Shown here: in pieces, positions 1 to 32,139 of the stretch | Layout: every line of letters begins with the position of its first letter | How positions within the stretch are numbered: the stretch's first letter is position 1 | Source of the DNA: Eutreptiella sp. 'Long Island Sound 2002' | Taxonomy: Eukaryota; Protista; Euglenida | Assembly: GCA_964036045.1 (NCBI GenBank) | Contig: OZ038378.1 | Location: forward strand, 146,072,001 to 146,136,000 | Direction: 5' to 3' | DNA length: 64,000 bases | The notes under the pieces: generated by a model | What the model was told of the DNA's origin: nothing | The model's input: only the letters and a program-made list of their open reading frames with translations | The model's database searches: none | Translations under genes and position numbers: made by a program

Positions 1-840
1 ACATCGGACCTTAGAACGTTTGATTGCCTGTAGTATTTGCCCCCAGTGCACCACAAGTGGGTCGCTCTTTGGTTGGTGCTACTGTGCACTGGGCATAATA
101 ACGTGCCCATGTCCACAAATGGCAACCTGAAAATTGCTACTGGCATTTTTTTTCGTTGCAGTTCTCGACGTTTGCGGCCTTTCCCAAGTGCCATCGATAT
201 TCCTTTCATTCTCTACACACAGCAACATACAACAGCAAGCACAACAAAAAGCGCAACAGCAACGTTTGAAAGAATGATTGTTGAAACTCATGGCCCTAAG
301 CCTGCTTCAAAAAGTCTCAGCGTTTATCTCCTTCATGTGGCAGTGGATAAAGCTGACGAAAGTGATGGTGTAGTATATAATGCTTAAAACTGTTGGCCCC
401 AGGCCTGCTTGAAAAGAGTTAAGCATTCTCTAGTAACACACAAAGAATCACATGGAACTGAAATTGCCTGAGACCGGACCCGCAAAGGCAACATACTTCC
501 CCACCTTGCCTAAGGGTGGGCAGGGCGCATTGGGCAACTTACACACAACTCATACCACATTGACGTTCTCTAGACGCGAAGCAAGAACGGGGCAAGAGGC
601 AACAGAATCAGCGAAAAACACAAAGCCCCACATGGTCCTACGCGTCACGCCACATGTACACCTCAAATATTACCCCCGCACCAACACGCAAATGTTGCGT
701 GCCCATCACATGCCACTGTAGACTAAAGAAACCATGCAAAAAAAGGCAATATGTGTGCGATTTGGTGAAAAATGCTCGAGGGGGGGGGGGGGGGGGGGGC
801 ATGATTCTTCTTTCGACCGGAGGGATCCATTCGCCAAGGG

Positions 841-1412
841 GCCCAAGTTTCTTCTTTCGAAGGGGGGGGGTCCATTGGCACAGGGGGTCCATTGACACGG
901 GTGGGGGTGTGTATCTGAGTTGGACATGCCATCCCCTGTCTGGTCATGTTGTGCAATGCCATGGCACAATCATGTGAAGCGCCGTACCACCATGCCACAG
1001 TGCTATGACATGACATATGATAACGTTAAACCACATGACATGACATAGCAAGAGATGACAGGACACAATACGACATGACATGACACGATATGACACGACA
1101 CGGAAGCCCATTACTCCAATGCCCCTTCGGTGGGCGTCCCTGCCCCCCCCCCCCCCCGCCCCGACCCTCGCCGTGAAGTTGAGCTCTACTGGTGTGAAAA
1201 AGTGCAAAAAGTTGTAAACATGAGCTCTATAGCCATCACTAAGATGCAAGAGGTACAAATGTTATGTCTAGACCACTTTTAAAGCGATGGCACAAGCTAG
1301 AAAGTGCTTACACAAAGAGTTCTTCTAGATTTTCAAAGAGAATTTGAGTCAATGGACCCCCCGCGCCCATGCCAATGGACCCCCTCTCTCGAAAGAAGAA
1401 ACATGGCCTGGG
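841..1412. repeat. Imperfect inverted-repeat pair (~55-65 bp arms) enclosing a pentamer microsatellite; MITE-like
   Basis: 841-896 (...tttcttctttcgaagggggggggtccattggcacagggggtccattgac) is the approximate reverse complement of 1348-1412 (gtcaatggaccc...gccaatggaccccctctctcgaaagaagaaac). Confidence 0.6.
990..1101 (+). repeat. Degenerate (ACATG/ACACG)n microsatellite
   Basis: Runs such as atgacatgacatatga, acatgacatgacatag and acatgacatgacacgatatgacacgacacgg. Confidence 0.8.
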
Positions 1413-1769
1413 CCATTGACACGGGCGGGGGGGGGGGGGGGGGGGGCACTCCACCGGTTCTAGCTCCCAAGTGCAGGGTCATTGCCCTGCACAGAAGTTC
1501 TTTCCACGGAAATCACGACCCTGCTTGGAGCTGGCCTTGGAGCGGGCGCACTCAGCGCAGCGCGCGTGTAACTAGTGCAACTAGCGTGCAACTAGTTGGG
1601 TTTCTTGCCGTACTAGAGACCCATACTTTGGAATACCAGGGGCATCATTAGTTGTCAAAGGTACCGGGGTACTAGGGAGTCGATGGGTGCCGAGGGCTCC
1701 CAATTGTCCACAAGCACCAAAACTATTACCCTCAGCGCTTGAGTTGAGGTGATGGACACACAATGAAGG

Positions 1770-4030
1770 AGGGGGGTGGGGGTTGCCATTTTAGAGAGGA
1801 AGGCCTACAGGGGTTTACGGACTGCCCGCTGGAAGAGAGGGGAGGGTTGCCCGCATATGGACCTCCGTTCTCGACCGTGGGTGGAAAGAGGGCTCCTCCC
1901 CCGCACGCCGCCCTCGCCAAGGCCAGAGCCTCTTTGGGGGGCGTGTTTATGAAACTTCCGTGCCCGCGCGGGCATGCTGCTCTACCGGGCGAGCCAAGCG
2001 CCATCACTTGCTGTTTCTTCCAAGGGGGGGGGGTGTGTCCGTGCGGCGCTTCAGTCCTCTCCCCCCACTGTTAGGGGCTTGGGGGGGGGGGGCAGCTGGT
2101 GGCGTGCAGGCATGCCCCTGGAGGAGCCCTGTTCCATGGGCCTCTTGGGTGTCGGCGTACCTCCCGCCCTGGGGTATGTTGGCTGGCCGGTCGTGCACGC
2201 AGTCGTGTGTGCTTAGGTGTGTGTGGGCCGGGAGCACAGACCCCCTTCGGGTGTCCACAGTGTCCCGTGTCCCCTGTCACAGCAGTGTCGCACCCGCCGG
2301 TGTGTCAAGGCGCAATTCGGACATGGGGGGTTGCCGTGACGCTCACAGACCCAAGATTTTGCCAGGCGCCCCCTTATTTCCTTCCTCCGTGCCCTGCCCC
2401 AAGCCATTTGCGGTGTGAAGAGAGGGGCCGCTTGTCGCCCATGCTCCACGTCTCCCACATCTCTGTCCGACGCCGCATCCCCCCCCCCGCCCCAGCCATG
2501 GTGTGTCCGCCCTTTCTCTAGCTTAGCATAGAAATCCATATCGTAGTGTCGCGCCAAGCTCTTAGCGGCTCCCTTTGCAGGGCGGCGCTTCTCCTGGGAG
2601 TCGCCCCGCCTTGCGGGCGGGCCCCCCCGCTGGTTTCTTGTTCTTGCCCCACAATTTGGCGTTGTGCTTGGCTGTGCACGCTTTCTCTTTCGGTGCCTAT
2701 CTGCCCTCCCCATGCGTCCGCGGTCATTCGAGGTGGCACCATATTGCAAGCGGGTGGGTGAAAAGGGGGCGGCCTTCGAGCCCCATGACGGTGCCCACCC
2801 ACATGGAGGTCAGGGAGCGGCAGTGATGCGTCATCTTGGCGGGGAAGATCGATTCTTGCTCTGTGGCCGTGCCCAAGGGTGGCTATCAGCTGCAACACGC
2901 TGCCCTTTTCTTGAAGAGACATGTCACCACCGATGAAGTTGGACTGCGGGGGCGGCGGTAACGACCGCCCTACATATGCCCCGAAGTCTAAGGCCAGCTC
3001 CATGAAAGATACTTGCCAATGCGCTTGTGGGAGGCGTTCGTGACTTGGGGGTAGCTTCAAAAGTTTGGAGTGCTAGTGTAGCACCATGGGTAGTAGGTCA
3101 GGCCCCCATTTCCATTCCCTTGGCATCTGTCGAAAGATTTGGGCGTCTGTGGGTGCTTCGCGCAGTTGTGGCCGCTGGAGCTGGTACTAGGGGTAGGTGT
3201 CCCGCTGGCCATTACTCGTCTAGATGGGGAAAAGCAGTACATATTCATCGTACATCACCTCTGTGGCCCCCAAAACTGTCAAAAACATGCCGTGCAGGCA
3301 TTGCATGAGGAACTCCCAGGGGTGTTTGTCCCCTGCGGCCCATTTGCGCCCTGCTTGTTATACTTGGTGCAGCTCCTGTCTTGTGGGCTCTAGCTCCTCT
3401 TTGAGCTCTTGACGGCGCTTGTGGCAGCGGTTGTCCTGGTCCATGCTACTAGTTTTCACCACGCTTTCCCGGACAATGCCGCACACGCGCAATCATGGCG
3501 GCCAGTCCCTCAAGGACCAAGCCGCAGGCCTTTGGCCGGTAGCATGACGTCTGTGATGAAGGGTTCCCATGCTGCCGCCTAGACCTCCCACCACCAGAGT
3601 AGGTGCTCCTCGTCCTCGGGTGCTCCCGAGGCACAGTAAGGGCATGTGCCCGTCGGACGTAAGCCCCGCATATGCACGCAGCTATGGCCGCTCGTCCATC
3701 AAAGCCCAGTGGGAGCGACCTCGGCTTCATGAGCGCTTTTTGTGCCTCCATGACACACTTCTCCCGGGCCCTTTTATTGGTTGCATCCCCAACTGCTTGA
3801 TCTCGTGTTGCTGCGGCAAAGTCCCACTATTGAGCTTCACTTTCGGGCCGTCCAGGGTTCCTTTGGCCCTATGCTGCACTTAGAAGGCCGGGTATTTGCC
3901 TACATTGATCTCTTGTCCCGGCAGCCTTGTCCACGCGCCCGTTGCTTGGAGCATCAACGTTAGCGTCAAGGTGCAGAGCGCTAGCATGTACGTATCATCG
4001 GCGTATCCTTCCGCCGATATCTCCACCGTG
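1770..4030 (-). mobile_element. 5'-truncated, decayed non-LTR (LINE) retrotransposon: RT C-terminal half plus 3' region
   Basis: Minus strand reads EGYADDTYML (YADD at 3994-4005), then MLQATGAWTRLPGQEINVGK (post-YADD IN.K motif), EIKQLG (YLG-like), SLPLGFDGRAAIAA and VSFMELALDF (2518-3060). Broken by stops and frameshifts; no QG motif upstream, so 5' truncated. Confidence 0.75.
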
Positions 4031-4715
4031 GTGCCTAGCGCCATCTCCTTTGTCAGTTCCTGGTCCTCATTGCTGTGTGCACCACTGCTCTCTGCTAAGT
4101 TGAAGCTAAACAGAGTCATGGCCACCCCAGGTCGCTTTGCAGGTATACTCAAGGTAGGAATACCACCGAAAACACCGATACCACCGAGAGAGACTGTGGG
4201 TGGAATGTGTGCCGCACCCAATCCATAGCAGTCTTACCGCCGCGCGGCAGCACGCCAAACGCATCGTCCTCTGAGCTGCCCAGGACAATGACGTAATACC
4301 CAATCATGGACGACGCGGCACCATCACCGAAAGCTCCAACAAATGGCCAACAGTCCCCATCCTCCTGCCTCGGTGAGCCGAACACCGAGGGGGAAACGGA
4401 GTACGGCAGCATGAGCCCATCATCCTCCTGCATAAACTTGAACGCCGGTTGGACGGACAAGGATGATCTTGGTGTTGGTGTTACGGCGTTGGGGTCGCCC
4501 TCAAACACCACAGACACCACTGACACCACAACAAGAAAACGGATATCAGGCGTCCACTGCAGGGAATCCATGCCTATGACCCAACTGATTTTGGCAACAG
4601 CTGCACGTGGTGCGACATGCAAAAAGTATCTGATTTTGCTAGGAACCAATTGCGGTGCGATCGGCTTGGTTTCCAATGTGGGAAAATGCGGATTTGAATT
4701 GATGGGTCCTCTTAG

Positions 4716-4801
4716 GGTACCAGCCTGAAATGGCCAAAACGACGGAAAAAAATGAAAATGTTGGGCGCCCGAGAATGGCCACAAACTTCGGGGCTGCCTG
4801 C
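4716..4801. repeat. ~85-bp foldback insertion of the tttcggccgttttggcc/ggctgcattttt family
   Basis: cagcctgaa (from 4721) pairs with ttcggggctg (ending 4796); the interior is one or two units of the family seen at 5011-5829. Confidence 0.55.
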
Positions 4802-5007
4802 AAAGGGGACCCTCCCGCAAAGCGCGCAGATCGGTGAGATCGCACTCGGGGGTGGCCGACACGACGCCGTCTCAGAGGGCTTCGGCAAACGGCAAACAGC
4901 CCTCCCGTGAAGTGCACCAGTGTCCTCAACAACCAACAATCAGCGGTGATTGCCATGCTCCACGTCTGTGTGCTGCGCACAGTTGAGGCAGATGAGGTGA
5001 AGATGGG

Positions 5008-5830
5008 TGTAGTCAGCTGCCCAAAAGAGTCGAAAACGGGAGAAAACAATGAAAACACAGCTGCCCCAAAATGGCCAAAGGAGCACAAAAAAAAAAGAAG
5101 AAGAAGCCGCGCAAAAGAGCCGAAGCGACCAAAGAGAAGAAACAAGGAGGCCTCCCGAAAATGGCCAAAACGGCCGAGGATGATGACCCTGAGCGTCAGG
5201 AAGTGTAAAAAAAAAAACGGCCGAGGATGATAAGACCCCAGCTGCCAAAAAGAAGGCCCGAAATGGCCACTAAGAATAAAAGAGCAGCCTCGTGAAAATG
5301 ACAATGACAACCGAAAAGAATGGAAACGCCACAGCCTGAAACTGGCCACAAAGGCAGACAATAATGAAAATGCAGCCACCCTATTATTTTCGGCTTTTTT
5401 GGCCATTTTCGGACGACCAACATTTTTATTGTTTTTCGGCCATTTTGGCAATTTCAGGCTGCTGCATTCATAGTATTTCAGGCCGTTTTGGCCGTTTTTG
5501 GACGGCTTCACTGCTATTATTTTCGGCTTTTTGGGCCATATTCGCGCGACTACCTTTTCATTTTCTTGCGCCGTTTTTTCCCCCGCCATTTGCGGGCCAC
5601 TGCTTTTTTTAAATCTTTTGGCCGTGTGGGCCATTTACTGGCAGTTGTATTTTTATCCTTTTCAGCCCTTTTGGTCAGTTTTGGGCGGCTGCATTTTTAT
5701 TACTTTCGGGCGTTTCTGCCATTTGCGGGACACTACATTTTTACTATTTTCCGCCGCTTTTTCTGTTTTCGGGCAGCTGCATTTTTATCTTTTTCGGCCG
5801 TCTTTGGCCATTGTCTGGCGGCTGGCTGCA
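5008..5830. repeat. Head-to-head foldback array of a ~40-45 bp degenerate AT-rich unit
   Basis: 5020-5350 carries units as aaaatggcc..aaaa..gcagcc; 5370-5830 carries the reverse orientation (tttcggccgttttggcc..ggcggctgcattttt). Termini 5008-5021 and 5817-5830 form a 14-bp stem with three G-U pairs. Confidence 0.75.
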
Positions 5831-6879
5831 TTTTTGCCCCTGGGCCGCAAGGCCCGCCGTTCGCTGTCCGGCCGCGGGGGAGGGGCCTCCGCGGCCGCCT
5901 GCGACGCTCAGCTGTAAAGCTGACCCCGGTGATTATGTTTACGGAGTAGCGCTCTCTCACTGTTGGCAACGGATGAAGTTCCGGGCGAACCGAAGGTATA
6001 TTTGTGGATGGCAGGTCGGGCCCTAAGTGGTTATATAGGGGACTTTTTTTTTACTGGCCAGAATCCGGATTTCTGGTCAAAAATAGGCGCGCACGCGTGA
6101 CCAGTGGCTGTCGCCGACATTTGTCCTGTTCAACTCAGCACCTAGCTAGAGTTGACGAAAATTCGATTTAAGACCATGAATGTGAAGGGTTTTAAAGCCC
6201 GGATAGTGCTGTGAAATCGGATTTTCGCAAAATTGCACGAATCACTGTTTCGGAACACCGATCGGCGATTTGCGCCAGCAGCGTGTTCGACGCCGAGGTT
6301 TTGACTGAATATTCGTGTTCAGCGTCAAAAACTACCCAGATTTAGCTTTCGGTTTATCAAAATTCGAGCCGGTAGGCCGAAGGTATGATTTTTTCAAGTT
6401 TTTATATAGTAGGCTCAGTTTGGCCATTTTGGCCTGTTTCGTAGGCCTATTGTAGCGAAACCACGAGGGTCTAGCAACGACCCAAGTGACAATCCAAGTT
6501 CATTTGCACGCAAATGATGTGAAAATCCCCAACGTTGACCACTCCAGCCTCCTCTTGATGCCTAGAAAGAGGGTACAAACGGTACAAAAAAAAGTACTTA
6601 GAGAAGGTTGCTTTTTCCATTGTACAGCCTTGTCAAAGCGCTATATCCCGGCCTAGGGATTGAACCTTTGTGCAAACTAGTCCCGTATGGGTCCAATGGA
6701 ACGGGTATAAGCAATGTTACGTCCCTATGGCCTCTATAGAGAGCACATGGGGGCGAAAACTCAAAGATACGTGCTTTTTAAGCTGTGTTTTTGGGTGCTG
6801 TCACAACACCAGCCTGCCAAAATCATGCGTCTCCCCCCCGGTGTTCCGGTTGCATGCCCGTGCTTCCTTGGGACTTCAA

Positions 6880-26902: not shown

Positions 26903-27047
26903 TGTAGTGAAACCTAGTAAAAGATTTTTTTAGAAAAAATTTTTAGAACATTTTTTTAATAGGTTTTACTACATTTTACTAGGTTTTACTACATTTTACT
27001 AGGTTTTACTACATTTCACTAGGTTTTGCTACAGCGCATACTAGGTT
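26903..27047. repeat. 20-bp tandem repeat (taggttttactacattttac, ~4 copies) with an inverted copy upstream
   Basis: Tandem units from 26960; tgtagtgaaacctagtaaaa at 26903-26922 is the near reverse complement of one unit. Confidence 0.8.
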
Positions 27048-27613
27048 TCACCACATGCCCTGTGGTGCAAGCCCCCCACCCCAAAGGGGGGGGGGGGGAT
27101 CGTCACTTCGTGACCGTCTCCCCGCCTGCCCCATTGGGGGGGGGGGGGCGTCACGGCATTGGGTTGAGGATGTCAGAGGCGGGGGGGGGGGGGGGGCGAG
27201 GTGGCAGCCCCCCAGTCTGTCCTGGGCACAGGGCCCCAGCCGGTGGATCGAGCGTGCTGAGGCGGGAGGGGCCTGGTCGGCGGGGCGTGTCGGCCGGTCA
27301 AGACAGTACAGCGGGGACAGACCACAGGCACGCAGAGTGCGTGTACCCGGAAAGCAGGGCCTTTACCTGCCCCAACCCCCTTCTTCTTCCGTGTGACCAC
27401 GGCGCTTGTCCGAGCAGCACGAGGGGGTGGTCCGCGACCGTTGGAACTGGGGGACTTGGGGGTTTCCTTTTGGTGTTGGTCTGTGAAGAGCAGGTTTGCC
27501 CTGTGGTTTGCTGGGGGATGGCATTTCAGGGATGCCGATGGACTGTCCCGCCACTTTGTTGCCCCCTCCCCCTTCAGTAAACCCCCCCCCCTTGTATGAG
27601 CTACGTCAAAGTC

Positions 27614-27918
27614 CCAAATTGATACGGTCCCTATGCCTACTGTAGTCTGGAGAAGGCCGTGGCTTACGCGTACCACACACATGGTGAGCTGGTGCGAGAA
27701 AGGGGAATATAATGCACAAATATCCCCAAAATCAGAGCTGTGTGGGTTCACATGGGTAAACAGTCACAACACCTGTGTCCATGACGCTATGCAACTGGCA
27801 AATTTGGCACCAACCCCATGTCTTACGTGGCTGCACTACATTTGCACCGAATCACATTAGTTACCAAATTGATACGGTCCCTACGCCCGCTGTAGCTTGG
27901 ACAAGGCCGTAGCTATTA
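27614..27918 (+). repeat. ~55-bp direct repeats 250 bp apart
   Basis: ccaaattgatacggtcccta.gcc..ctgtag..tgga.aaggccgt.gct at ~27614 and ~27864. Confidence 0.75.
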
Positions 27919-27940
27919 CAGGCAGGGGGGGGGGGGTAAC

Positions 27941-27961
27941 CTGAGTGTCTATTTTTTTTTG
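27941..27961 (+). other. Relic of the euglenid spliced-leader (SL) exon
   Basis: CTGAGTGTCTATTTTTTTTTG versus the 3' 21 nt of the Euglena SL (CTGAGTGTCTATTTTTTTTCG): 20/21 identical, the mismatch being C>T in the terminal CG. Not followed by a GT donor. Confidence 0.8.
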
Positions 27962-29712
27962 ACATTGGCGAAAGGCGCCTAGGACAGATCAGCCTTGATC
28001 TCTTTTTGGCTGTGCATGCTGTTGCTTGCGCAATTTCTCTGAGCGCAATCACCACTTGACACACTCACGTGTCACTGCACGGGGGGGGGGGTACGTCACA
28101 TTGATGCACCTCCATAGACATGGTGGTCTGGGCCTCGGCAGTCTCTTCACGGTGCGTGCACACAACGCCCTCTGTCAGTTGTTTTCGGTGGTGCTTTTAC
28201 CGTTGTTCTCGCCCAAAGGGCGGGGGGGGGGGAGGTATGTGCAGCGCCACAGCCTGTCCCCTTCTGCGCACCCGCCTCATGTGCGCCGTCTCAGTCCCAC
28301 TCCACACAGACCACCGTGGTACTGCCGTTGGTGTGTCTGGTCGCCGTCGTGCCCCGACCCAATGTCCCGGGCCGCACTCCGGCTCCGTGTGCCGTACCGC
28401 AGCCCCCGCCATGTGCCTGGCTGTGCTGCCTTCAACGCCCGGCTGTAGTTGTTCTCTGCGAAGGGAATCGGCGATGACTGTCTCCTAAGTTGGGTTCCCA
28501 CCGGCCCAAGGGCTGAAAAAAATTGCCCCATAGTTTGCAATTGGCCTTATCACATTTACATTGGTTTTTTGTGGGCCCCAAAGTGGGGTTATGACCAATA
28601 ATAGGTCAAATTGGCCTCCAAACAGGTTGGTTGAATTTTTTGCAAAAAATCCCTCGTGAAGGGAATTGGCGATGACTGGCAGTCCCGCTTTGTGCCCCGT
28701 GCTGTAGTCTCGGAGGGCACGGGGCAGGAGTGCAGCGGGGCATATGGCGCAGGACTGCATCACGGGGCTGGGGGCTACTGAGGGCGGGACCTGAGAAGGC
28801 TTATGAAGCAGGACTGCAGTCGGGGTACGCGGGCTCACTACCCACGTGGACCAGTGCAGCAAGGCGCCCGAAGTGGCACATGGAGCAGAAGTTCATCATG
28901 GCCCATCGGTCGGGGCTGTGGTCTGAGCTCGGGGATGACGATGGTGATGCGCCAGGAGAGGGTGACGACAGGTCTACAGATGACGGACATTGAGGAAACA
29001 CAGGATCAGGGCACTGCAAGACGAGGGTCTGTGGCAGGGTGAGCAGCATCACAAAATGGGGCGGCTGGTTTTGATGGGTTGCATATTCAGGCGTACAGTA
29101 GGAAGCGGGGCACTCACTGGAAACAGAAAACACATGCAGATTGGAGCAGTCGCGTTCCGCTGCATCCGTTGGTGACAGTATAAGATTTTCAAGTACACAT
29201 CCCACCGTCCTCTGACGGCAGGTGGGTCCTCCACGCGGGATCATATGTGTTGTCCCTTAACTGCCACGCAGATCCGGTCCGTCTGACCAAACGCTCACGA
29301 GGCACATGTAAGTCTGAGCAATGAAAAAAAAGAAAATACTGACGGCTTGGGGCACGTGTGCAGCGGCTCCAAGAGTAGTGCGGAGCAGACGAGACACACA
29401 GATTGAGGGTGCAGTGGGGCTCATGGGGCAGGATGGCAGCGGGGATGAGGCGTGTTGAGTGGGACTGCAGGCGCGCACCTGCGGCCCAGCGGGGCCGCAG
29501 CACTGCATCGTGTTGCATCCCGCAGTAGTGCCGCAGGGTACATGGGGGACTGCCCCCCCTGTGCATGCGGCAGGCCGGCATGCGTGCGCATGGCACCGGA
29601 CCACCGCGGGGCACGCAGAGAGACACTGCAGGCGGATACAGCGAGCAATGCCTGTCATAGGGTGACGAGGGGCGGGGGAGAGCGGTATTGCAGAAGCGGG
29701 GCTTGAGCAGGG

Positions 29713-29963
29713 GCTTTTTTAGGGGACAATTTTTTTTAGTTAAAGAACCTGGTCTTGGTCCAGTAGCATTTTTTCTCCAACCGCCATCGGTTACTCCCCA
29801 ATCGCCGTCAGTTACCCTCCAACCGCCGTCGGTTGCACTCCGACCGCCGTCGGTTGCACTCCGACCGCCGTCGGTTACCCCTCAAGTGCCATCGGTTGGA
29901 GCTGTGCATTTTACTGACCACCGGACACACCAGCTTTTTTTTTTCTGAATTGAAAAACCCCAT
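29713..29963 (+). mobile_element. 251-bp insertion with ~21-bp internal repeats, flanked by a 14-bp direct repeat
   Basis: gggcttgagcaggg at 29699-29712 and 29964-29977; interior accgccgtcggttgcactccg-type units at ~29780-29900. Confidence 0.65.
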
Positions 29964-30101
29964 GGGCTTGAGCAGGGCACCGCGGGCAGAATCGGGAGTG
30001 GGCCTTCGGGAGCAGCGCCCCCTCATTGTGCCCAGGTCCCGCACGCACCGCCGTCTCCAGAGGGGCAGCCGCCCCCCACCGCACCGCCCCCGCCGGTGCA
30101 G

Positions 30102-30449
30102 TGCGGGGGGGGCTACCAGCCCCGCTTCCCCGCGGGCTACCGGGCGCTCTACCGCCTGGGGCAAGGGGCCCAGGGCGTGGTCTACCAGTGCGAGTGCGCC
30201 CGGAGCGCCCGGAAGGTGGCGGTCAAGCAGTTCTTCATGAGGACCCCGGCGGACGCCCGCAAGGCCTACCGCGAGCTGCGGATCCTCGCGCACCTGCAGC
30301 CGAGCGCCCGCGTGCCGCGGGTGATCGAGTGCACGCAGCAGCAGGGCACCGTGTCCCTGGTCATGGAGCTGATCGACTGCAACTTGGCGGAGGCCCTGCG
30401 AGGGGGCGCCATCCGGCAGTACTACGTCGTCCGGTTGATCCTGCTGCAG
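30102..30449 (+). CDS. MAPK-like (CMGC) Ser/Thr kinase, N-lobe exon
   Basis: LGQGAQGVVY (Gly loop), VAVK, AYRELRIL (alphaC Glu) and LVMELIDCNL. Acceptor gtgcAG at 30100-30101; donor CAG|GT at 30450, phase 0. A possible first exon 29590-29661 (ATG..AGG|GTGACG) is unproven. Confidence 0.85.
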
Positions 30450-31338
30450 GTGCTGCGCGGCGCCAGTGCATGCCCACCCCCCCCTTCTGCCAGGCCTGGG
30501 GGGGCGGGACATGGTGGGGTCATGGTCTTAGGGACGCCCGTGGAAGGGGGTGGTGAGCTGACCCAGACAGCCCATGGAATGGTCACATGGTCACATGTCT
30601 CGAAAGGCGTTCCCCCACGTGCCCCACAACCTCATCCTTGGATCCAGCAAGAGAGCCTTTTTTTTGTAAACAAAGCGTTTTTCGATGACAGGTGTTCACT
30701 GTTCTTCGATCAGGGAACACCATCAACGCAAAGGGGCTGAAGGGGGGGCACCTGCCGCGGCGCGCGCGCGGAGCGGAGATTTGGCGACCTATCCCTACCA
30801 AGGAACGGTGCCTACCACCAACGGGTTTTCTCTTCGTAGGGGCCGTTTTAGGATGGGGAAAGCCTAGTCCGTTCCGGGAAAACACGCCGTCCTGTATTCC
30901 ACAGCTCCCAATTCCCTTGATGGGCAGTCACGACATGAAGAATATGCTGATCTTTGCCTGCACATGGTCATGCTGCCCTGTTGTGACCGCGCTGGTGCGG
31001 TGAGGTATGGGCACATTTTGCTACATCCCTGTTTTTAGTACCGCTCATCACACAAGCATGGCCTTATCTAAGCACGGGCCCCCTGTCTGACCATTGTTTT
31101 GCTGACCTTCAGCGTGCTTGTGCAAGGGGACGGGGGTACCGTCGTCCATTGGCCCCCACCCTCGTCCCTAGACCCCCAAACTGCCGGGGGTTGTTGGCCA
31201 CGTTGTGTCATTCACACCCCCAAAACACGATCACGCGACCCCCTCCACCGCTGCTAACCCCACGAGCCCCATGAGCAGGGGTGATGTCGGATGCCGCCCC
31301 AGGAGCGCTGTGTCAGGTCCGCCGGTCTTGTGTCGCAG

Positions 31339-31795
31339 GTGCTGCAGGGCCTGCGGTACATGACGCAGTGCGGGATCATGCACCGGGACCTGAAGCCCGC
31401 CAACCTCCTGATCCGCGAGGACTGCCTGGTCAAGATCTGTGACTTCGGGATGGCCCGCGCCTCCAAGTTCCCGGACGCCTGCGGCGGTCTGGAGGCCCTG
31501 ACCACCAACGTCATGACGTGGCCGTACCGGTCCCCGGAGGTCATCCTGGGCCTGCCCTACGCCTGCGACACCGTCGACTCCTTCTCCGTCGGCGTCATCT
31601 TGGGGGAGATGCTGCAGAGCCTGTGCCACACCAAAGCGGAGCTCCGGGGGCTCCCCCTGAGCCGGCTGCTGCTATTCCCTGTGGACCGGGACGACCGGCG
31701 GCCCCGAGAGATGTGGATTCAGGAGCACCTGCGGCTGATCTTTGGGCTGATCGGGAGGCCCACGGCGGAGCAGTTGGAGGAGGTCGGGGCCACAG
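31339..31795 (+). CDS. MAPK-like kinase, catalytic exon
   Basis: IMHRDLKPANLL, VKICDFGMAR, TTNVMTWPYRSPEV and DSFSVGVILGEM. Acceptor tcgcAG at 31337-31338 (phase 0, matches upstream exon); donor CAG|GT at 31796 (phase 1). Confidence 0.92.
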
Positions 31796-32139
31796 GTGTG
31801 GCACGTCTGGGACGGGCTGGTCCACCGCCCGTCCCCGCCTCTCTGTCGTGCCACTGCCCCCCTGTCATACCACTGTCCCCGTGCCCCCTTGGCACACCCA
31901 AACCACCAGCACAGGCACCACAACATGCAGTGCGATGTGGTGCCCGGCCTCTCGTGTGTGCCCTGGTGCTTCCGGCCCAATGCATGTCTGGGATGACGAC
32001 GGGATGCCTCATGGCACACCGTTGTGTAGATGATCCGAACCAAAGACGCCCCAGTTTGGCGAAATGATTTTGCGAGCGGGTGGTTCGGAAAACGGTTACA
32101 CGGGTGACGGTGATGTAGCATACCGGAAATACACCGCGC

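What the first reader, a model, noticed from the sequence alone, without database searches (positions are those of the whole stretch)
27941..27961. Spliced-leader relic in genomic DNA: trace of mRNA retro-recycling in a euglenid
Seen: CTGAGTGTCTATTTTTTTTTG, 20/21 identical to the 3' end of the Euglena spliced leader, the single difference being C>T in the final CG. It is followed by acattgg..., not by the GT donor an SL RNA gene would have. Known: the SL is normally added to mRNA by trans-splicing, and SL relics upstream of genes are the hallmark of cDNA re-integration described in dinoflagellates. Inference: a reverse-transcribed, trans-spliced mRNA 5' end was inserted here; the first downstream ATG (28016) opens only MLLLAQFL*, so the copy has decayed.
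Basis: partly seen in the sequence, partly recalled or inferred. Interest (0 to 1): 0.75.

Follow-up and report, generated by a model that had tools for sequence, protein, structure and literature searches.

The report
Spliced-leader-tagged Penelope-like retroelement tail
The 21 letters are a real DNA copy of the Euglena spliced leader, but they head a 119-letter end piece of a Penelope-like jumping gene rather than a decayed host gene, which shows that this element's RNA was trans-spliced and then copied back into a run of G's.

Summary
Observation confirmed. Window 27941-27961 equals nt 6-26 of the Euglena gracilis spliced leader (SL), with one C>T at the final CpG. The genome's own SL-RNA genes carry the same leader followed by GT.

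Interpretation partly supported. The relic does record reverse transcription of a trans-spliced RNA. That RNA was not a host mRNA. The sequence after the SL (27962-28080) is the last ~119 nt of the terminal repeat of a 5.6-kb retroelement. This element has a zinc-knuckle ORF1 and an ORF2 ordered GIY-YIG, CxC, RT-like, so it resembles a Chlamys-type Penelope-like element.

In SL-less copies the same sequence follows a pyrimidine tract plus AG. The SL is joined exactly after that AG in at least three independent insertions from three subfamilies. Each of these is bracketed by G-rich direct repeats; in the window the repeat is G11TA.

A 95-nt short-read contig at single-copy depth spans the junction without any difference.

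The scan has already met SL relics (LINEs, retrogenes) and these Penelope-like elements elsewhere in this genome. New here is the link between the two. I found no paper describing either in Euglena.

The parts
27925..27938 (+). Upstream G12 + TA. Positions 27926-27938 are the upstream copy of the 13-bp direct repeat G11TA, read as a target-site duplication in a (G)n tract.
   Evidence: Read directly. Found independently by the repeat finder (family D2) and by my script. Caveat: the sequence is low in complexity and another G run lies at 28220-28236.
27939..27940 (+). The two letters AC between the repeat and the relic. Their origin is open: SL nt 1-2 with TTT skipped, or untemplated letters.
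   Evidence: inference only.
27941..27961 (+). Spliced-leader relic, SL nt 6-26, with C>T at the last CpG.
27962..28080 (+). The part of the retroelement terminal repeat (pseudo-LTR) that lies after the acceptor, up to the family's common end ...CACTGCAC. It carries a 16-nt deletion relative to other copies.
28016..28042 (+). Its ATG is conserved in the tail of the family and it is not a decayed gene.
   Evidence: compare L081 990-1010 and alignment A3.
28081..28093 (+). Downstream G11TA, the second copy of the direct repeat.

Best explanation
A transcript of a Chlamys-like Penelope-like retroelement was SL trans-spliced at the AG acceptor that lies 185 nt into its 328-bp terminal repeat, 143 nt before the repeat's end. 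The element is about 5.6 kb long. It has a zinc-knuckle ORF1 and an ORF2 ordered GIY-YIG endonuclease, CxC motif, RT-like polymerase.

The resulting short RNA consisted of the SL plus the element's 3' tail. It kept the 3' end that the element's reverse transcriptase uses. It was reverse-transcribed and integrated by target-primed reverse transcription at a (G)n:(C)n tract, which duplicated G11TA. Reverse transcription stopped a few letters short of the capped SL 5' end.

Later changes were C>T at the SL's CpG and a 16-nt deletion.

Shown: the SL identity, the junction at the acceptor, family membership of the tail, the flanking repeat, the independent recurrences, and the presence in short-read contigs. 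Inferred: the trans-splicing event itself (no RNA data), the use of the element's own enzymes, and priming on the G tract.
For: 1. The SL is the organism's own.
2. Window 27962-28080 belongs to a dispersed family. In SL-less copies the same letters are preceded by ...tgttctccacAG or ...ttccctacAG.
3. The genome holds 145 exact SL-less junctions and 6 exact SL-headed ones. The six represent three independent insertions: the window; C19 x3 plus C1468, which are duplicates of one event; and C21. They come from three subfamilies and each is flanked by G-rich direct repeats.
4. Family copies pair at about 5.24 kb. L081 732-6303 is a 5572-bp unit with 328-bp direct terminal repeats (97% identical) and a GGGGGGATGG flank repeat.
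5. ORF1 has two CCHC knuckles.
6. ORF2 (1124 aa in L082) gives a weak GIY-YIG hit, E 0.0037, repeated in 5 of 13 homologues. It also has a CxC motif, a DK motif and polymerase motifs A, B and C.
7. The low-confidence model's best Foldseek matches are TERT, group II intron RT and retron RTs. VIA Z is 5-6.4 to the same enzymes over residues 232-484. Atlas look-alikes carry GIY-YIG, RVT_1 and HTH_animal.
8. Craig et al. 2021 describe N-terminal-EN PLEs with pLTRs, frequent 5' truncation, a TSS in the pLTR, non-autonomous derivatives that share 3' ends, no canonical hammerhead, and insertion into (CA)n and (C)n (PMC8557442). All of these were seen here.
9. A related junction, SL+AAAGGCGCC, occurs 96 times. 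Two sampled copies are flanked by (TG)n on both sides. An SL-less relative has ...ctgcAG directly before AAAGGCGCCTAG.
10. A short-read contig spans the junction at single-copy depth.
Against: No RNA evidence was available for SL-ACATTGG transcripts. The only RNA run laid (X7, an estuary metatranscriptome) has zero depth at the junction.

The flanking repeat is low in complexity, in a region with several G and C runs, so the target-site duplication cannot be proven.

The RT assignment rests on a poor model (pLDDT 53), on middling Z scores and on motifs read by eye. Pfam and PDB sequence searches find no RT. Motif C reads RDN, not xDD.

The kind of run for X1-X3 is not on record. They may come from the sample that was assembled, and they are contigs, not raw reads.
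Confidence: 0.85

Rival explanations
1. The origin is the same (a trans-spliced element RNA) but the route differs. A full-length SL-headed copy (SL, 143-nt partial repeat, body, 3' repeat) was inserted and later collapsed by recombination between the two repeats. Alternatively the RT jumped between the two identical repeats of one RNA. Either route leaves a solo SL plus tail.
For: The element carries the same 143 nt at both ends, so both events are mechanically possible. The acceptor in the 5' repeat would give a sensible mRNA with a ~245-nt 5' UTR before the ORF1 ATG.
Against: None of the six exact SL-headed copies is full length. The two sampled copies of the 96-copy sister junction are also short. 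The flanking direct repeat sits directly around the short insert.
Confidence: 0.1
2. One reading: a retro-copied host mRNA 5' end whose coding sequence has decayed.
For: An SL relic without a GT donor. Such retrogenes do exist in this genome, according to earlier scan notes.
Against: The sequence after the SL is a dispersed retroelement tail that ends after 119 nt at a direct repeat. 28094-28457 is unique sequence with no Pfam hit. Apart from one deletion the tail is 96-97% identical to its closest relatives. The nearest gene, a protein kinase from ~30096, is split into exons and lies 2 kb away.
Confidence: 0.02
3. A fragment of an SL-RNA gene or pseudogene into which a 5'-truncated element copy happened to insert at the exon end, or a chance similarity.
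For: SL-RNA genes are very numerous: up to 1476 sites have the SL followed by GT.
Against: The letters upstream of the relic (G12TAAC) do not resemble the conserved SL-gene upstream sequence ...cagagaggtac. The same junction, exactly at the family's AG acceptor, recurs in three subfamilies. Chance is excluded by the shuffles and the reversed control.
Confidence: 0.02
4. An assembly chimera or cDNA contamination.
For: None specific.
Against: A 95-nt short-read contig with 0 differences spans the flank, the SL and the tail at the same depth as the single-copy flanks. The insert is bracketed by a direct repeat inside otherwise unique DNA. A second study's run (X4) has junction-bin depth 4.5, against 4.3 on the unique flank.
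Confidence: 0.01

Closest known systems
Dinoflagellate SL relics and retrogenes (recycling of trans-spliced mRNAs; reviewed in PMC6050394 and PMC12014239)
   Same: A DNA-encoded copy of the organism's spliced leader sits at the 5' end of a retro-copied RNA and serves as a tag of RNA-mediated duplication. Stacked relics also occur in this genome (L013).
   Different: The host is a euglenid. At this locus the copied RNA is a retroelement's own non-coding tail and not a gene. The copy ends in a G run and not in poly(A). It sits in a homopolymer target with a direct repeat. There is only one relic here.
N-terminal-endonuclease Penelope-like elements (Chlamys/Naiad) and their non-autonomous derivatives such as MRC1 (Craig et al. 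2021, PMC8557442)
   Same: Domain order GIY-YIG, CxC, RT; pseudo-LTRs; frequent 5' truncation; insertion into (C)n/(CA)n microsatellites; no canonical hammerhead; short derivatives that share only the 3' end.
   Different: That paper does not mention Euglena. There is a separate zinc-knuckle ORF1. Motif C reads RDN. The short derivative here is headed by the host SL, so its 5' end was made by trans-splicing and not by truncation or deletion.
SINEs and L1-mobilised processed pseudogenes
   Same: A short non-coding RNA that carries the partner element's 3' end is copied in trans or in cis by target-primed reverse transcription, leaving target-site duplications.
   Different: There is no pol III promoter and no poly(A). 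The RNA is a processing product of the autonomous element itself.
SLACS/CZAR/CRE elements of trypanosomatids
   Same: Retroelements associated with spliced-leader sequence in Euglenozoa.
   Different: Those elements insert site-specifically into SL-RNA genes at the DNA level (my own knowledge, not tested here). Here the SL was acquired by the element's RNA and carried to an unrelated site.

Membership tests
SL-relic retrocopy (trans-spliced RNA copied back into DNA) | DNA-encoded copy of the organism's own SL, not followed by the SL-RNA intron | tested here: met
SL-relic retrocopy (trans-spliced RNA copied back into DNA) | The SL is joined at a 3' splice acceptor (AG) of the parent sequence | tested here: met
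   all SL-less copies inspected but one (L059) have a pyrimidine tract plus AG immediately before ACATTGG.
SL-relic retrocopy (trans-spliced RNA copied back into DNA) | The parent transcript is observed with the SL in RNA data | not testable with these tools
   The copy ends ...CACTGCAC followed by G11.
SL-RNA gene | SL exon followed by a GT donor and the conserved intron, with the conserved upstream sequence | tested here: not met
   compared.
N-terminal EN+ Penelope-like element (Chlamys-like), for the parent element | GIY-YIG endonuclease N-terminal to the polymerase | tested here: inconclusive
   Pfam GIY-YIG gives E 0.0037, below the gathering score, in 5 of 13 homologues. The motifs FIY..YVG and conserved R, H, E and N are visible in the sequence.
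N-terminal EN+ Penelope-like element (Chlamys-like), for the parent element | CxC motif between EN and RT | tested here: met
   PDCFCSD in ORF2; PxCxC in the family consensus.
N-terminal EN+ Penelope-like element (Chlamys-like), for the parent element | TERT-related reverse transcriptase | tested here: inconclusive
   There is no Pfam or PDB sequence hit. The model is poor (pLDDT 53), but its top structural matches are TERT, group II and retron RTs. Motif C is RDN.
N-terminal EN+ Penelope-like element (Chlamys-like), for the parent element | Pseudo-LTRs and frequent 5' truncation | tested here: met
   328-bp direct terminal repeats. Truncated copies L054, L059 and L067.
N-terminal EN+ Penelope-like element (Chlamys-like), for the parent element | Insertion bias for (C)n/(CA)n microsatellites | tested here: met
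   There is a G run at the 3' end of every copy, and on both sides of the copies whose 5' end was seen. Sister-family copies sit in (TG)n.
N-terminal EN+ Penelope-like element (Chlamys-like), for the parent element | No canonical hammerhead ribozyme in the pLTR | tested here: met
   No Rfam hit at E<=1 in L081 600-6500.
N-terminal EN+ Penelope-like element (Chlamys-like), for the parent element | Phylogenetic placement inside the Naiad/Chlamys clade | not tested
   No reference PLE proteins were obtained. The searches returned only unannotated close relatives.

The most novel reading that the evidence does not exclude
The AG acceptor that sits just before the conserved AAAGGCGCCTAG box in the pseudo-LTRs is the regular 5'-end maturation site of Euglena Penelope-like elements, which would mean they depend on host SL trans-splicing to cap their mRNAs. 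Because every unit carries the same acceptor ~140 nt before its 3' end, splicing would also release SL-capped tail RNAs. These would behave as self-generated, SINE-like riders and would have seeded a hundred or more insertions in (G)n and (TG)n microsatellites. More broadly, the thousands of SL relics would make euglenids a second lineage, after dinoflagellates, in which every RNA-mediated duplication is tagged and countable.
Probability: 0.45. Interest if true: 0.75.

Novelty: new variant of a known kind. Interest (0 to 1): 0.6.

Why it matters
SL relics are a built-in tag for RNA-to-DNA copying. In the papers I could search they are described for dinoflagellate genes, not for euglenids and not for Penelope-like elements.

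This locus shows three things:
- Euglena retroelement RNAs are substrates of the host trans-splicing machinery.
- The 3'-terminal ~120-140 nt of such an element appear to be enough for its mobilisation.
- The insertions go into homopolymer tracts.

It also gives a precise, testable splice site for studying how Penelope-like elements, whose life cycle is poorly understood, make their mRNA 5' ends. For annotation, it warns that many of the ~5000 SL matches in this 2.3-Gb genome mark transposon pieces and not recycled genes.

Tried and rejected
- Rfam at gathering score over the whole window and at E<=1 over 27000-29000 and over the parent element found no SL-RNA, hammerhead or other family. An earlier scan note reports a permuted hammerhead at an SL joining site in another Penelope-like family. 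The tail here has a vaguely similar layout (GAAA ... hairpin ... GUGAUCA), but the core is not canonical and no model matches it.
- Folding of the tail RNA gave z -1.7 and -1.4, which is not distinctive.
- Pfam finds no RT in any of 13 homologues. PDB sequence and profile searches found nothing.
- The word-indexed protein searches returned only unannotated ENA proteins.
- The exhaustive profile search found 1465 clusters, but the 150 listed are all close, mostly fragmentary relatives without names. It did not place the family.
- The AlphaFold model is of low confidence, so the structural matches are only indicative.
- A search for a paralogous empty site was not possible, because 28092-28457 is unique in the genome.
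As a result two further probable SL-headed copies seen (C6:15246650 and C25:9749324) and the 96 SL+AAAGGCGCC sites could not be read.
- Literature searches for SL relics, retrogenes or Penelope-like elements in Euglena found nothing relevant.

Full report
**Observation**

Window 27941-27961 reads CTGAGTGTCTATTTTTTTTTG and is followed by ACATTGG. The first 19 letters occur once in the window, against none in 100 shuffles. They occur 4966 times in the window's own 2.28-Gb genome, against none for the reversed control.

The published E. gracilis spliced leader is ACTTTCTGAGTGTCTATTTTTTTTCG (PMC6242988). An SL primer with two more 5' letters is given in PMC5654406. Ten of the first 30 genomic sites are SL-RNA genes: cACTTT...TTTTCG followed by GTATATACTCGC and a conserved upstream sequence. 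The organism therefore uses this leader. The window carries SL nt 6-26 with one change, C>T at the terminal CpG.

**What follows the relic**

A DNA search of the genome with 27930-28930 shows that 27961-28091 belongs to a dispersed family, at 84-97% identity on many chromosomes. In contrast, 28092-28457 is unique.

In the SL-less family members the letters ACATTGGCGAAAGGCGCCTAGG... are preceded by a pyrimidine-rich stretch ending in AG, for example tgttctccacAG or ttccctacAG. The SL in the window is joined exactly after that AG.

Exact-pattern counts give 145 SL-less junctions (CAG+ACATTGGCGAAAGGCGCC) and 6 SL-headed ones. The six are:
- the window;
- one event on C19 present in three segmental duplicates, plus an unplaced contig;
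- one event on C21.

Alignment A3 shows that these three events belong to three different subfamilies of the repeat and that all switch to SL at the same column. The SL 5' ends differ (CTGAG..., TTTTCTGAG..., TTCTGAG...), as expected for separate reverse-transcription events that stop near the capped end.

**Boundaries**

The family ends in all copies at ...CAC(C/T)GCAC followed by a G run. In the window:
- G12TA lies at 27925-27938.
- Two letters AC follow, then the relic (27941-27961) and the tail (27962-28080).
- G11TA lies at 28081-28093.

The 13-letter direct repeat was recovered by my script and by the repeat finder. The C19 and C21 insertions are likewise bracketed by G-rich repeats. 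The repeats are low in complexity and the neighbourhood has other G and C runs. I therefore read them as probable, not proven, target-site duplications.

Apart from a 16-nt deletion that removes a small hairpin, the window's tail differs from its closest relatives by 3-4 substitutions in 119 nt. The ATG at 28016 (MLLLAQFL*) is conserved in the family's tail. It is not the remnant of a gene.

**The parent element**

Family copies often pair at about 5.24 kb. In L081 the unit spans 732-6303 (5572 bp). It has 328-bp direct terminal repeats (97% identical), and GGGGGGATGG lies on both flanks. The acceptor lies 185 nt into the repeat, 143 nt before its end.

ORF1 has two CCHC zinc knuckles. An uninterrupted ORF2 of 1124 aa (L082) shows the following:
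- A weak GIY-YIG match at residues 349-429 (E 0.0037), repeated in 5 of 13 homologues.
- A CxC motif and a DK motif.
- Polymerase motifs A (EADCKDQFN), B (PMGGPFSAQAADL) and C (QFRDN). RDN is invariant across homologues down to 40% identity.

Pfam and PDB sequence searches do not see an RT. The AlphaFold model is poor (pLDDT 53). Still, its best Foldseek matches are telomerase, group II intron and retron reverse transcriptases. VIA-align gives Z 5-6.4 to the same enzymes over residues 232-484. Atlas look-alikes carry GIY-YIG, RVT_1 and HTH_animal.

Craig et al. 2021 (PMC8557442) define N-terminal-endonuclease Penelope-like elements by a set of features: GIY-YIG, CxC, RT order; pseudo-LTRs; frequent 5' truncation; a TSS in the pseudo-LTR; non-autonomous relatives sharing 3' ends; no canonical hammerhead; and insertion into (CA)n and (C)n. 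Truncated copies (L054, L059, L067), the G-run targets and the absence of a hammerhead fit. I file the parent as Chlamys-like with moderate confidence, because phylogenetic placement was not tested. Thirty-one earlier notes of this scan describe such two-ORF elements in this genome. I reached the assignment before reading them.

**Mechanism**

Shown: the junction of the host SL to the first letter after an acceptor of a retroelement repeat, three times independently, each time as a short insert in a G tract.

Inferred: an element transcript was trans-spliced at that acceptor. The SL-plus-tail RNA kept the 3' end used for target-primed reverse transcription. It was copied into a nicked (G)n:(C)n site by the element's own RT and endonuclease.

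The same short RNA can come from the acceptor near the unit's 3' end, or from the 5' repeat if 3'-end formation occurs at that repeat's own end. A collapse of a full-length SL-headed copy is a less likely route, because none of the six exact SL-headed copies is full length.

The pattern seems general. SL+AAAGGCGCC occurs 96 times. Two sampled copies are 150-190-nt inserts flanked by (TG)n. An SL-less relative has ...ctgcAG directly before AAAGGCGCCTAG. The acceptor next to this conserved box is thus shared by related families.

**Reads**

A 95-nt Logan contig of run X1 covers 27891-27985 without a difference at depth 25.6. That is the depth of the unique flanks (25-28). A loose end in X2 reproduces the C19 copy's flank. 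A run of another study (X4) has junction-bin depth 4.5, against 4.3 on the unique flank.

These are contigs of runs whose kind is not on record. X1-X3 may come from the assembled sample. No RNA evidence was obtained, because the single RNA run has no depth at the junction.

**Genome-wide frame**

Of the 4966 SL 19-mers:
- 1476 continue CGGT. This is an upper bound for SL-RNA genes, since at least one dispersed family also starts GT.
- 1924 continue CG plus a non-G letter and cannot be donors.
- In the 30-site sample, 20 are not SL-RNA genes, and most of these fall into repeat families.

Earlier scan notes report SL-headed LINEs and SL-tagged retrogenes in this genome. The phenomenon has therefore been met before in this scan. 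The link to Penelope-like tails is what this locus adds.

I found no paper on SL relics, retrogenes or Penelope-like elements in Euglena. The 2024 genome paper lists LTR, LINE and 'unknown' repeats only.

**Verdict**

It is a new variant of a known kind, of moderate to good interest.

Noticed in passing
L013 (G000:C1:1041251-1044269), around the SL match at C1:1042751-1042769 (- strand): Three SL copies in tandem: a full SL, then ACACTTTCTGGGTGTC...CG, then a stump AGTGTCTATTTTTTTTCG, before other sequence. This is the stacked-relic pattern known from dinoflagellates and implies repeated rounds of trans-splicing and retroposition.
   Followed up: no
L010 (G000:C1:440229-443247), SL match at C1:441729-441747 (- strand): The SL is joined directly to ACTGATGAGGGCC...GGGCCGAAACCGG, which looks like a canonical hammerhead core (CUGAUGA, stem, GAAAC). 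An A-rich tandem repeat follows ~250 nt downstream.
   Followed up: no
Genome-wide; examples L018 and L030: The junction SL+AAAGGCGCC occurs at 96 dispersed exact sites. The two copies read are 150-190-nt inserts with (TG)n on both sides, so they are probably SL-headed tails of a (CA)n-targeting sister family.
   Followed up: partly
L082:1811-5182:- (ORF2) and alignment A1: The polymerase motif C is QFRDN. R, D and N are invariant in 13 homologues down to 40% identity, where reverse transcriptases usually have xDD. Whether such an enzyme is active is open.
   Followed up: partly
window 27614-27664 and 27864-27914; also 27685-27758: Two copies (86% identical, 250 nt apart) of a 51-nt segment belonging to an extremely abundant repeat. 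Summed k-mer depth in the short-read contigs is 10^4-10^5, against 25 for single-copy DNA. The SL-tail insert lies ~10 nt beyond its end.
   Followed up: no
L002 and L003 (G000:C1:63399-66417 and 88316-91334): SL-RNA gene variants whose exon ends ...TTTTTTTTCA before GTATAT, instead of CG. SL 3'-end variants therefore exist, and the window's TG could in principle be a variant rather than CpG decay.
   Followed up: no
L014, L015, L017, L019: A repeat family whose copies begin with the full SL followed by GTGTCTTTTTGTCCATGCTTGCCC. Three of the four sit a few letters after C or G runs. A 272-aa ORF of unknown family lies ~230 nt downstream in L017.
   Followed up: partly
window 30096-30740 and 31291-32067 (+): Two exons of a protein kinase gene (Pkinase E 2e-12 and 6e-25), 2 kb downstream of the insert and unrelated to it.
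   Followed up: partly
window 29775-29898: Tandem array of a 21-nt unit (CTCCAACCGCCGTCGGTTACA), five copies.
   Followed up: no
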